A stretch of 64,000 nt of DNA, taken from assembly GCA_001179505.1 (NCBI GenBank), contig CDMY01001052.1, positions 153,486 to 217,485 of the forward strand, read 5' to 3'. The translations under genes and the position numbers were made by a program. This document shows positions 44,546 through 47,026 of this stretch, in pieces. Origin of the DNA: Vitrella brassicaformis CCMP3155 (lineage: Eukaryota; Protista; Chromerida). Within the stretch, counting starts at the first letter, position 1. Each line of letters starts with the position of its first letter. Below the pieces are notes generated by a model. That model was not told the DNA's origin. It was given only the letters and a program-made list of their open reading frames with translations, and did not search any database.

Positions 44546-47026
44546 TCACTTGTCCACCTGCCCATTCAGGAAAGGACATCCCCCCACCCGCACACCCGCC
44601 CCAGCAGCAGCAGCAGCGCTGCCCTTGTCCCTCCCCGTCACTGGGCAGGACCCCTCCACGCCCCCCATCATCATCAGCATGGGGCACCCACCCAGGTGTA
44701 TTTCCTTGGCGTTGGCGGCGGTGGTGGTGGTCTCCTGCTCCGTCTCGCCCTCGCCCTCGCCCTCTTCCTCTTCCTCCTCCTCACACACCTCCTTGACCAA
44801 ATCCGACATCACATTCTCAATATTGGCAGAGATGGTTGTGATGCTCCGCTTGAACACCGCCTGTGGGCTGCTCTCAATCTGCTGCCACAGGCTGCTCTCA
44901 AGCTGCTGCAGCTGATGCGGTGTGTTGCCCACGGTAGTCACCGCCCGCTTGACCATCTGGGTGAGCGCCTCCGAGCGGGCCGCTGATGGCTTCCGTGAGC
45001 TCTTGCGCGAGAACGACCGGGTCATCGACTTGGTGATGGTCTTCTGGATGCTCTCCGGCATGTCGATGTCGAGAGCCGACAGGGCGCTCTTGAAGGAGGC
45101 GCACTGCAGGGTGGCGACCGAGGCGGGTGTCTCATCTGGTGGGGTGTGTGGAGTGGAGGGGGTGGGGGGCGTGGGGGCGGGCAGGGCGTCGGCCTCATCG
45201 GCAGCCACCGACCAGAAGGCGAAGGTGCTGGCTGACGGCAGCACCGCGGGAAGGCGCTCGAGCACCGCCTCGATCCACAGCCACAGCTCGCTCTTCTCGG
45301 GGCTCGTCTTGTCCTTTTTGGGGCCAAAAGCCGAACCCTGCCTTTGCAGCTTGGCCTTGAGCGCCCGAGCGCCCTTGGCGAGGTCGAGGTCAGCCGCTCT
45401 CTCCGCCATGCTCTCCGTGAACTGGTTGAACATCTGCAGGAAGGAATCCAGGCAGACACACATACGCCATCCACAGATCATCCATCCGTGACATGTGTGG
45501 CTTTGCTGCAGACTGCACGCACCTGGCGAGGCACATCCTGTGTGTGGTCATACTGCGTCCCGGCAGAGAACTCCCTGTTCCTGGTGGAGAATGCCTGCAG
45601 GTAGGCGAAGGCTTTGCGCCTATGGCCACCGAGGAAGCCGTTGATGTAGGTGTCGACCACGTCCTGGTACAGCGACGACAGCTCGCTGTCCTTCGGCTGG
45701 CTCAACACAAACTCCCTGCACACACACACACAGAGTCATACAGAATGCCACATCCGCTAGCCACAGTTGCTCACTCACTGACCTCAGCTGCGGGCCGCCC
45801 TCCACGGCGTTGATAAAATCCACATGGTTGGGCTGCAGCAGAGGGCGTGTGCGGTGGACGACGCTGCCCAGCTCGCTCTTAAAGTTCTGTCGGCCCAGGA
45901 AGGCGTCCAGCAGATGGATGGTCGGATGCTGAGGGCCAGATGGACCGAAGTGACCGCCGTAACCCACCGTCAGCTTCGCAACGCTCAAGTGCCACACCTT
46001 TGGAGGCACCACCCTGACGACGTGACGAGAGAACAGATGAGATGAGGTGACACGACGCTCTCGGTGCGGTGCAGGCTTTGATTTTTTCTCATACTGCTCA
46101 CTTGTGGGTAATGCGTGCAAATGCGTCGCTCATCCGCTCGATGGACGTCAGCATGGCAGGGAGCAGAGCCTTGACAGCGGCAACGTCACCTGAGGCAACA
46201 GCCTGACACCAACAATCCCGCCACACACACACACACAGACAACGATGGGCCAACCACTCTCACCACCCTCGGCCCTCCCCTCTCACACACGTACCTTCTG
46301 GCAGTCGACCACAAGCCCAGGCAGATCGGCGGTCGCGAGGTTCATGTCCGTCGTGGCACAAAAGAAGTGGAACTCGGTGGTCTCGCGTATGCGTCGGGTC
46401 TCCTCGTCCTCGCCCTCCATCAGCCCGGAGCACACGGGGGTGTCGAGCATCAGCGCGTCCTTGGGGATCTCCCACGCCTGCGCCCCCACATACTGCTGCA
46501 CCAGCGACGGCTGCAGGGAGGTGTTGTTGAGGCAGAGGTCCGCCAACGTGCAGTAGTTGAGCGTGTGCAGCCGCGAGCTGATCTCCTGCATCGGCTGCTC
46601 CAGAGAGGGCGGGAAGTGCGTCGACTGTTTCCACAACTCCGACATGCCGTCGTCGCGGCGGCCCTCATCGACGTACGCCTGGGCAATGGTGTAGAGGAGC
46701 GACTTGGCCTTCAAGAGAGCGAGACCGTCAAGATGGCCAGTCTGCTCAATCGGCATCCGCGCCACAGTCTCGCGAAGCTTGCCGTCGGCGTACAGCTGGG
46801 CCACACGCGGCCGGAGGGCCACCCATGAGGCGGGCAGCACGTCGTCCTTCACCTCGTCGTAGGAGATCAGATCGACATTGAAGCCCCTGCACACACAACA
46901 CACACACACACACAAGCGGAGGGATGAGATCTGTCTGTTGGCACTGCTCATCTCTTACCATGTTCTACTGAGGGGCCCTCGGACGATGTCACTACTGTCT
47001 AGAATCTGCTGAGCCGTGGCCGACAT
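44546..47026 (-). CDS. Divergent indoleamine 2,3-dioxygenase-superfamily (IDO/PrnB-like) heme protein with a long C-terminal extension, multi-exon
   Basis: IDO landmarks in order: PLSRTWGF, LLYTIAQAYV, PPSLEQPMQEISSRL..TLADLCLNN, EFHFF, GPSGPQHPTIHLLDAFLG, LQPNHVDFINAVE, EFVLSQ..SLYQDVV..FLGGHRRKAFAYL (proximal His). Confidence 0.82.

What the first reader, a model, noticed from the sequence alone, without database searches (positions are those of the whole stretch)
44546..47026. IDO-fold heme enzyme with a rewired substrate pocket: candidate new dioxygenase activity in a chromerid
Seen: IDO-superfamily landmarks in order, including the proximal heme His (FLGGHRRKAFAYL) and the loop GPSGPQHP..LLDAFLG. 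Established: human IDO1 binds Trp through F163/F164/S167, F226/F227/R231 and the C-terminal GTGG loop. By-eye alignment gives HFFCAT (Thr at 167), WHLSVAKLTVGY (Ala where the carboxylate-binding Arg231 should sit) and SAGT in place of GTGG. Inference: heme binding is kept but L-Trp recognition is altered. The enzyme may act on another indole or aromatic substrate, as PrnB and MarE do, or in O2/NO chemistry.
Basis: partly seen in the sequence, partly recalled or inferred. Interest (0 to 1): 0.75.

Follow-up and report, generated by a model that had tools for sequence, protein, structure and literature searches.

The report
Divergent IDO-fold heme protein, remodelled pocket
This is a real six-exon gene of the alga Vitrella brassicaformis for a very divergent relative of the tryptophan-degrading heme enzyme IDO: it keeps the fold and the heme-binding histidine but has replaced the pocket wall that normally grips tryptophan, so it probably does something other than ordinary tryptophan breakdown, though what is untested.

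Summary
Window 47026..44546 (minus strand) is a six-exon gene. Its 690-aa product is the public record CEM39848.1 / A0A0G4H7K7 of Vitrella brassicaformis CCMP3155, annotated "uncharacterized".

- **Fold:** residues 1-~395 are an IDO domain: Pfam PF01231 73 bits; hhalign against 46 canonical IDOs 99.5%; the predicted model superposes on IDO2 and IDO1 at Z 33/32, against PrnB 22, TDO 11 and MarE 9.
- **Kept:** the proximal His (H362) and several heme-side residues.
- **Changed:** the roughly 39-residue canonical segment carrying F226, F227, R231, L234 and GLxYEG is replaced by an 18-residue segment specific to this family. No alignment puts a basic residue at R231: it is Ala266, or Val265 in the other register, with Lys267 next to it. 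E171 and R343, invariant in the 46 canonical IDOs, and the nearly invariant S267 are also changed.
Thr at position 167 is the IDO2 state, not a novelty. The GTGG register was off by one, so the Thr379 hydroxyl is kept as Ser or Thr.
- **Family:** only three other relatives exist in about 15 billion proteins. They form a very long-branched clade under purifying selection (dN/dS 0.13), and conservation peaks in the remodelled segment.
- **Genome context:** Vitrella also has two canonical IDOs.

Function is inferred, not shown.

The parts
46959..47026 (-). Exon 1: ATG at 47026-47024, residues 1-22 plus two bases of W23
   Evidence: matches the N-terminus of P0001
46295..46886 (-). Exon 2: residues 23/24-220, covering the small domain and the start of the large domain. 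Includes F197-F198 (= F163/F164) and T201 (= S167, codon 46354-46352)
   Evidence: (100% to P0001 24-220)
46102..46202 (-). Exon 3: residues 221-253/254
45783..46013 (-). Exon 4: residues 254/255-330/331
45947..46000 (-). Remodelled pocket-wall segment K259-F276 (KVWHLSVAKLTVGYGGHF). It replaces about 39 canonical positions that hold F226, F227, R231, L234 and GLxYEG. A266 (45979-45977) sits in the R231 column; K267 is at 45976-45974
   Evidence: It lies in the most conserved part of the family and is low pLDDT in both models
45923..45946 (-). G277-P284 (GPSGPQHP), equivalent to IDO1 G261-S268. S263 and Q266 are kept; G262 becomes P, A264 becomes G, S267 becomes H
45523..45715 (-). Exon 5: residues 331/332-395. 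Holds the proximal-His helix and the JK-like loop
45622..45624 (-). Codon CAT of H362, the proximal heme ligand, equivalent to IDO1 H346
   Evidence: conserved in P0002 and P0004
45556..45570 (-). F380-S381-A382-G383-T384, the degenerate counterpart of G378-T379-G380-G381-T382
   Evidence: pLDDT below 50
44546..45433 (-). Exon 6: residues 396-690 plus the stop at 44546-44548. The first ~15-25 residues close the IDO domain; the rest is a tail found only in Vitrella
   Evidence: Coding-like GC3 of 0.77-0.87. No Pfam or Atlas match. Absent from P0002 and P0004
44573..44686 (-). Three Cys-Pro motifs, each followed by a hydrophobic residue: C645-P (GGCPML), C658-P (GSCPV), C681-P (GGCPFL)
   Evidence: 3 of the tail's 5 Cys are followed by Pro, binomial p about 0.003. 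Reading them as heme-regulatory motifs is inference

Best explanation
The gene encodes a heme-binding protein with the two-domain IDO fold. It belongs to a small, ancient and very divergent side branch of the IDO family, and it is not the cell's kynurenine-pathway tryptophan dioxygenase.

Shown:
- Fold, family membership and a retained proximal His.
- Replacement of the distal pocket wall.
- Purifying selection concentrated on that replacement.

Inferred:
- Heme is still bound through H362.
- The distal pocket keeps its aromatic floor (F197/F198, Leu/Ile/Cys at the Tyr126/Cys129/Val130 positions) but has lost the Arg231 clamp for an alpha-carboxylate.
- The protein therefore either oxygenates an aromatic or indole compound other than free L-Trp, or holds a Trp-like substrate in a different pose, as PrnB does, with different chemistry.
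- The Vitrella-only C-terminal tail, with three Cys-Pro motifs, may bind heme transiently, as the tail of heme oxygenase-2 does.
For: Fold and family:
- Pfam IDO 73.3 bits.
- hhalign 99.5%, E 3.8e-22.
- AlphaFold models with domain pLDDT mostly 80-98.
- Foldseek top hits are all IDO1/IDO2, with TM 0.72-0.79 for the IDO1 chains.
- VIA-align: IDO2 Z 33.4 (2.9 A, 354 residues), IDO1 Z 32.2, PrnB 21.7, TDO 11.0, MarE 9.4.

Canonical residues kept in all three full-length members: H346, S263, Q266, D274, R296, H303, Y353, F387, F163, N133.

Canonical residues lost:
- R231, E171, R343, G246, P300, G378 and L388 are invariant in the 46 canonical IDOs, and S267 nearly so; all are lost here.
- Residues 259-276 cannot be aligned to the canonical profile at all.

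Selection:
- dN/dS is 0.13 between P0002 and P0004.
- Three-way identity is 27/40 in residues 261-300, against 36% overall.

Literature:
- R231A/L abolishes IDO1 activity (PMC8518741).
- PrnB binds the substrate carboxylate through Gly-Gly backbone, a loop Ser and a heme propionate, without Arg (PMC11791213).

Genome context: two canonical IDO genes, a 3-HAO gene and no TDO elsewhere in the genome. The kynurenine step is therefore already covered.
Against: - There is no biochemical datum of any kind, and heme binding is not shown.
- No coordinates were available, so no residue-level superposition was possible.
- The pocket-wall segment is below pLDDT 50-60 in both models, so Lys267 or another basic residue could still reach the carboxylate site.
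- The Thr379-equivalent hydroxyl and S263 are retained, which fits a substrate that is still an amino acid.
- No transcript or protein evidence for the Vitrella gene was found here.
- The tail has no homologue support.
Confidence: 0.5

Rival explanations
1. A non-catalytic heme protein that binds or senses a gas (O2, NO or CO) or stores oxygen. It would be analogous to the IDO-derived myoglobins of abalone, which kept the fold and heme but lost tryptophan turnover.
For: - The proximal His and heme-side residues are kept while substrate anchors are lost.
- Three family-invariant His residues (H262, H283, H287) replace non-His residues near the heme loop. They could stabilise a bound gas or give six-coordination.
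- There is precedent for an IDO turned into a myoglobin (PMC4191572).
Against: - The aromatic floor of the substrate pocket (F163/F164 equivalents) and the JK-like loop hydroxyl are conserved. A pure gas binder would not need them.
- The positions of the His residues relative to the iron are unknown, because the model is low-confidence there.
Confidence: 0.2
2. Still an L-tryptophan 2,3-dioxygenase, but a low-efficiency one like IDO2 or fungal low-activity IDOs. Lys267 or backbone groups would replace Arg231.
For: - Thr at position 167 and a non-Tyr residue at position 126 are IDO2-like (PMC8518741).
- Lys267 is invariant and adjacent to the R231 column.
- The T379-equivalent hydroxyl is kept.
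- PrnB shows that carboxylate binding without Arg is possible.
Against: - R231 is invariant in all 46 canonical IDOs and conserved even in TDO. R231A/L abolishes IDO1 activity.
- The whole 39-residue segment is replaced.
- The branch is extremely long, about 6.5 changes per site from every canonical IDO.
- Two canonical IDOs already exist in the genome.
Confidence: 0.15
3. A pseudoenzyme or scaffold that no longer binds heme. It would be retained for a structural or signalling role carried by the long C-terminal tail.
For: - R343, L388 and E171 around the heme and the proximal pocket are lost.
- The 295-residue tail is predicted as weak helices plus disorder.
Against: - The proximal His and its helix motif are invariant in all members.
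- Purifying selection peaks at the heme-pocket loop.
- The tail is absent from the two relatives, so it cannot be the conserved function.
Confidence: 0.1

Closest known systems
Indoleamine 2,3-dioxygenases IDO1 / IDO2 (Pfam PF01231)
   Same: - Two-domain fold: Z 32-33, rmsd about 3 A over 354 residues.
- Proximal His, S263, Q266, D274, R296, H303, Y353, F387 and F163/F164 are kept.
- Thr at position 167, as in IDO2.
   Different: - The F226-F259 segment (about 39 residues, including R231 and GLxYEG) is replaced by 18 family-specific residues.
- E171, S267, R343, G262, G378, G380 and L388 are changed.
- An 11-residue insertion follows the JK-like motif.
- A very long branch separates the clade from all canonical IDOs.
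- Vitrella has a 295-residue tail.
PrnB (pyrrolnitrin biosynthesis) and Shewanella SO4414
   Same: - IDO-type fold with a His-ligated heme.
- No Arg clamp for the substrate carboxylate in PrnB (PMC11791213). PrnB is therefore a functional precedent for an IDO-fold enzyme with a different substrate pose and different chemistry.
   Different: - Clearly more distant structurally: Z 21.7-21.9 against 32-33 for IDO1/2.
- No PrnB Pfam match at E <= 0.1.
- Eukaryotic, with the IDO small domain.
TDO and MarE (TDO-type heme-dependent aromatic oxygenases)
   Same: Same superfamily core of helices around a His-ligated heme.
   Different: - Z only 9.4-11 over about 200 residues.
- TDO keeps the Tyr, Arg and Thr substrate anchors; this protein lacks the Tyr and the Arg.
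IDO-like myoglobin of abalone (Haliotis/Sulculus)
   Same: An IDO-family protein that kept heme and lost tryptophan turnover (PMC4191572).
   Different: - That protein is 34-38% identical to vertebrate IDOs.
- This one is about 18-22% identical to canonical IDOs. Its sequence was not compared directly with a molluscan sequence here.
Heme-regulatory (Cys-Pro) motifs in the C-terminal tail of heme oxygenase-2
   Same: Three Cys-Pro dipeptides, each followed by a hydrophobic residue, lie in a disordered C-terminal tail of a heme enzyme homologue (HO-2: PMC2742820).
   Different: - Resemblance at motif level only.
- No homology to HO-2, and not conserved in P0002 or P0004.
- Heme binding untested.

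Membership tests
IDO family (Pfam PF01231) | Profile score above the curated gathering threshold | tested here: met
   73.3 bits against a cut-off of 26, E 2.2e-20, profile positions 29-341 of 412. Exon 2 alone scores 37.2 bits.
IDO family (Pfam PF01231) | Two-domain all-helical IDO fold | tested here: met
   VIA-align gives IDO2 Z 33.4 and IDO1 Z 32.2 with 354 aligned residues. Foldseek probability is 1.00 and TM 0.72-0.79 for the IDO1 chains. This is a predicted model, not an experimental structure.
IDO family (Pfam PF01231) | Proximal heme-ligating His (IDO1 H346) | tested here: met
   H362 aligns with H346 in hhalign, MAFFT and HMMER. It is invariant in P0001, P0002 and P0004.
IDO family (Pfam PF01231) | Invariant Arg (IDO1 R231) that binds the substrate carboxylate | tested here: not met
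   R is invariant in the 46 canonical IDOs. The family has Ala in that column, a gap in hhalign, and an unalignable segment in HMMER. Lys267 is adjacent, and the 3-D position is unresolved.
IDO family (Pfam PF01231) | GTGGT motif of the JK loop, with T379 contacting the substrate amino and carboxyl groups | tested here: inconclusive
   The counterpart is F-[ST]-A-G-[TS]. The hydroxyl residue and one Gly are kept; G378 and G380 are lost. The loop is low pLDDT and the alignment is MAFFT only.
IDO family (Pfam PF01231) | Conserved GLxYEG segment between the R231 helix and the GGS loop | tested here: not met
   About 19 residues are deleted; G246 and Y249 have no counterpart.
IDO family (Pfam PF01231) | L-Trp to N-formylkynurenine activity | not testable with these tools
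   Needs an enzyme assay.
PrnB family | Closer in sequence and structure to PrnB than to IDO | tested here: not met
   PrnB scores Z 21.7 against IDO 32-33. The only Pfam family at E <= 0.1 is IDO.
TDO / MarE type | TDO-type fold match over the whole domain | tested here: not met
   Z 11.0 for TDO and 9.4 for MarE, with 190-224 aligned residues. No PF03301 match in the whole genome.
Heme-regulatory motif (tail) | Cys-Pro dipeptide followed by a hydrophobic residue, in a flexible region | tested here: met
   CPM, CPV and CPF at residues 645, 658 and 681, inside the segment 618-690 where pLDDT is below 50. Heme binding itself is not testable here.

The most novel reading that the evidence does not exclude
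The clade (Vitrella plus two or three unidentified protists) is a new functional class of IDO-fold heme-dependent aromatic oxygenase. Its conserved 18-residue replacement wall, with an invariant Trp-His pair and Ala-Lys in place of the Arg clamp, would create a pocket for a non-amino-acid indole or aromatic substrate, or a new reaction on a Trp derivative. In Vitrella the enzyme would be coupled to a C-terminal Cys-Pro heme-sensing tail.
Probability: 0.3. Interest if true: 0.7.

Novelty: new variant of a known kind. Interest (0 to 1): 0.45.

Why it matters

This is a eukaryotic IDO-type protein in which the most invariant substrate anchor of IDO and TDO is gone. The replacement is itself the most conserved part of the protein, which marks it as a concrete, expressible candidate for a further activity.

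It also gives a natural experiment on which parts of the IDO pocket can be dispensed with while the fold and the heme site are kept.

The value is limited by the complete lack of functional data and by the tiny, taxonomically obscure family.

Tried and rejected
Searches that added nothing:
- Direct phmmer of exon 2 against PDB sequences found no IDO hit. The link to IDO needs profiles or the full-length protein.
- More family members were sought four ways:
  - Exhaustive phmmer of exon 2 over 1.84 billion representatives gave 3 hits.
  - A word-indexed profile search gave 2 hits.
  - A search with the conserved core, residues 245-405, returned only the protein itself.
  - A JGI metagenome scan gave none.
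- The tail gave no significant Pfam match (best E 0.11, below every curated cut-off) and no usable Atlas match.
- Earlier findings of this scan: nothing near the locus or by words.

Not achieved:
- The organisms behind P0002 and P0004 (Logan runs ERR13858653 and ERR13858645) were not identified. No paper cites the runs and Rfam found nothing on the contigs. A neighbouring glutaredoxin-DEP gene is only about 40% identical to its Vitrella counterpart.
- A residue-level 3-D check of R231 was not possible. The tools return no coordinates, and the segment is low-confidence in both models.

Readings rejected:
- Recent duplicate of the Vitrella canonical IDOs: those two pair with each other at 99% support, far from this clade.
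- Pseudogene: open frame, clean splice sites, coding GC3, dN/dS 0.13 in relatives.
- PrnB- or MarE-like by descent.

Exons were searched one by one by reference. The full-length searches used the database protein P0001 that one search returned.
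Full report
**1. What is in the sequence**

The minus strand between 47026 and 44546 holds a six-exon gene.
- Coding exons: 47026-46959, 46886-46295, 46202-46102, 46013-45783, 45715-45523, and 45433-44546 including the stop.
- The five introns are 67-92 nt, and each begins GT and ends CAG.
- I translated the exons one by one by reference.

An exhaustive phmmer search of exon 2 against 1.84 billion cluster representatives returned a 690-aa database protein, P0001. It is 100% identical over residues 24-220. 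Its full sequence has exactly the exon order and junctions of my model. P0001 is CEM39848.1 / UniRef A0A0G4H7K7, "unnamed protein product / uncharacterized protein" of Vitrella brassicaformis CCMP3155. The assembly size agrees: 72.7 Mb in 1064 contigs.

Four of the five exon junctions lie in ungapped, conserved alignment with two relatives whose reading frames are uninterrupted. The exon 2/3 junction lies beside an indel.

**2. Family and fold**

- Pfam gives IDO (PF01231) at 73.3 bits, E 2e-20, against a cut-off of 26.
- A profile of the small family against 46 canonical IDOs gives hhalign probability 99.5%, E 3.8e-22, over 325 columns. The alignment runs through the proximal-His helix.
- AlphaFold2 with a 51-sequence alignment models residues 1-376 mostly at pLDDT 80-98. 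A second model, of relative P0002, reaches pTM 0.81.
- Foldseek's top hits are all human IDO1 or IDO2; the IDO1 chains score target-normalised TM 0.72-0.79.

An exhaustive structural comparison against about 48,000 PDB representatives gives:

| Chain | Z | Other |
|---|---|---|
| IDO2 | 33.4 | rmsd 2.9 A, 354 residues |
| IDO1 | 32.2 | |
| SO4414 | 21.9 | |
| PrnB | 21.7 | |
| TDO | 11.0 | |
| MarE | 9.4 | |

The protein is therefore an IDO-type member of the superfamily. It is not PrnB-like or MarE-like by descent.

**3. What is kept and what is changed**

I mapped canonical columns to IDO1 numbers through a mammalian IDO2 (P0024) and its alignment to IDO1 chains. Of 77 columns that are at least 80% conserved in canonical IDOs, 26 are kept in all three full-length family members.

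*Kept:*
- H346 (H362 here), S263, Q266, D274, G278, R296, H303, F306, Y353, G381, F387.
- F163 in MAFFT, and F163/F164 in HMMER against IDO1.
- N133, P223, G236.

*Changed:*
- Y126 to Leu, C129 to Leu/Ile, V130 to Cys (hhalign).
- S167 to Thr.
- E171 to Asn/Gly.
- G262 to Pro, A264 to Gly, S267 to His.
- P300 lost.
- R343 to Leu.
- G378 to Phe, G380 to Ala.
- L388 to Thr/Ala.

*The largest change:* a canonical-IDO HMM aligns P0001 in three blocks, 43-145, 193-258 and 277-374, and leaves 259-276 unaligned.
- About 39 canonical positions are replaced by 18 residues with the family consensus KVWHxxVAKLTxGYxGxx. The lost positions hold F226, F227, R231, L234 and the GLxYEG motif.
- MAFFT puts Ala266 in the R231 column. 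The alternative register gives Val265. hhalign opens the gap at that point.
- No method places a basic residue there, but Lys267 is adjacent and invariant.

**4.

- Thr at position 167 is what IDO2 has (PMC8518741), so it says little.
The alignment gives F-S-A-G-T = G378-T379-G380-G381-T382, with Thr instead of Ser in the two relatives. The hydroxyl that contacts the substrate's amino-acid moiety in IDO1 is thus retained.
- An 11-residue insertion follows this motif.

**5. Is the remodelled pocket functional?**

The family forms a 100%-supported clade on a very long branch, about 6.5 substitutions per site from every canonical IDO. It is not sister to the two canonical Vitrella IDOs, which pair with each other.

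Three observations argue for a constrained, working site rather than decay:
- The two non-Vitrella members give dN/dS 0.13 (NG86, dS near saturation).
- Three-way identity is 36% over the domain but 27/40 in residues 261-300, that is, in the replacement segment and the adjoining heme loop.
- That most conserved stretch is also the one AlphaFold cannot place: pLDDT is below 50 at 262-275 in P0001 and about 50-62 at 301-330 in P0002.

**6. Context**

- The genome has two canonical IDO genes on other contigs, at 259+83 and 203+87+35 bits. Their products are P0006 and P0007.
- It has a 3-hydroxyanthranilate dioxygenase gene and no TDO.

According to PMC8518741:
- L-Trp in IDO1 is held by S167 (through water), F163, Y126, T379, the heme 7-propionate and R231.
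- R231A/L abolishes activity, and T379A lowers it five-fold.
- TDO conserves the Tyr, Arg and Thr anchors.
- E171, S267 and R343 line the proximal inhibitory pocket. All three are changed here.

PrnB holds the substrate carboxylate with Gly-Gly backbone, a loop Ser and a heme propionate, without Arg (PMC11791213). Loss of R231 therefore argues against canonical Trp dioxygenation. It does not argue against every Trp-like substrate.

**7. Most likely mechanism, and rivals**

| Reading | Confidence |
|---|---|
| Heme-binding IDO-fold oxygenase whose distal pocket no longer clamps an alpha-carboxylate in the IDO way; acts on another aromatic or indole compound, or on a Trp derivative in a different pose | about 0.5 |
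| Gas-binding or sensing heme protein, like the IDO-derived abalone myoglobin (PMC4191572) | about 0.2 |
| Weak L-Trp dioxygenase | about 0.15 |
| Heme-free pseudoenzyme | about 0.1 |

Fold, membership, the retained His, the replaced segment and selection are shown. Heme binding, substrate and chemistry are inferred.

**8. The tail**

- Residues from about 420 to 690 exist only in Vitrella.
- They keep coding-type GC3 of 0.77-0.87.
- They have no significant Pfam match (best E 0.11, below every curated cut-off) and no usable Atlas match.
- They are modelled as weak helices followed by disorder.
- The last 50 residues hold three Cys-Pro motifs, each followed by a hydrophobic residue. Two sit in a repeated GGCP[MF]L context. 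Three of the tail's five Cys are followed by Pro, p about 0.003.
- This resembles the heme-regulatory motifs in the tail of heme oxygenase-2 (PMC2742820). It is a lead only.

**9. Rarity and novelty**

Besides P0001, the family consists of:
- P0002 (511 aa) and P0004 (520 aa), from two Logan run assemblies.
- The 174-aa ENA fragments P0003 and P0005.

Further searches found nothing.

The gene is a public but uncharacterised record. The analysis of its pocket is new, and the protein is best called a new variant of a known kind. Interest is moderate: it is a clear, testable candidate for new chemistry in a well-studied fold, but there is no functional evidence yet.

Noticed in passing
window 44573-44686 (-), residues 645-682 of the product: Three Cys-Pro motifs with a hydrophobic residue after each (GGCPML, GSCPV, GGCPFL) lie in the disordered last 50 residues. 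The pattern resembles heme-regulatory motifs, such as those of the heme oxygenase-2 tail. It is absent from the two relatives.
   Followed up: partly
window 42082-42381: An assembly gap of 300 N is flanked on both sides by poly-C runs. It explains the apparent AT-rich, skewed block in the composition profile.
   Followed up: yes
window 47422-48760 (+): A DEAD-box helicase gene (Pfam DEAD, E 6e-12 on its first long open frame) is transcribed divergently from the IDO-like gene. The two start regions are only about 400 bp apart, so they probably share a bidirectional promoter region.
   Followed up: partly
G000:C1064:26299-27756 (L001/L004) and G000:C964:126029-127592 (L002/L003/L006): There are two canonical IDO genes elsewhere in the genome, with R231, GLVYEG and GTGGT intact. 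Their products are P0006 and P0007. The genome also has a 3-HAO gene (C293:59163-59369) and no TDO.
   Followed up: partly
window 46887-46958, 46203-46294, 45716-45782 (introns 1, 2, 4): These introns carry long (TG)n runs. In introns 1 and 4 the run lies directly before the CAG acceptor, in place of a classical polypyrimidine tract.
   Followed up: no
L007:2460-3170 (+): The contig that carries relative P0002 has an apparent glutaredoxin-DEP domain gene 640 bp downstream on the same strand (domains read by eye from the translation, not confirmed by a profile search). Neither gene has introns, and the contig is about 50% GC. The source is thus a gene-dense or transcript-derived sequence from an organism only distantly related to Vitrella (about 40% identity).
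   Followed up: partly
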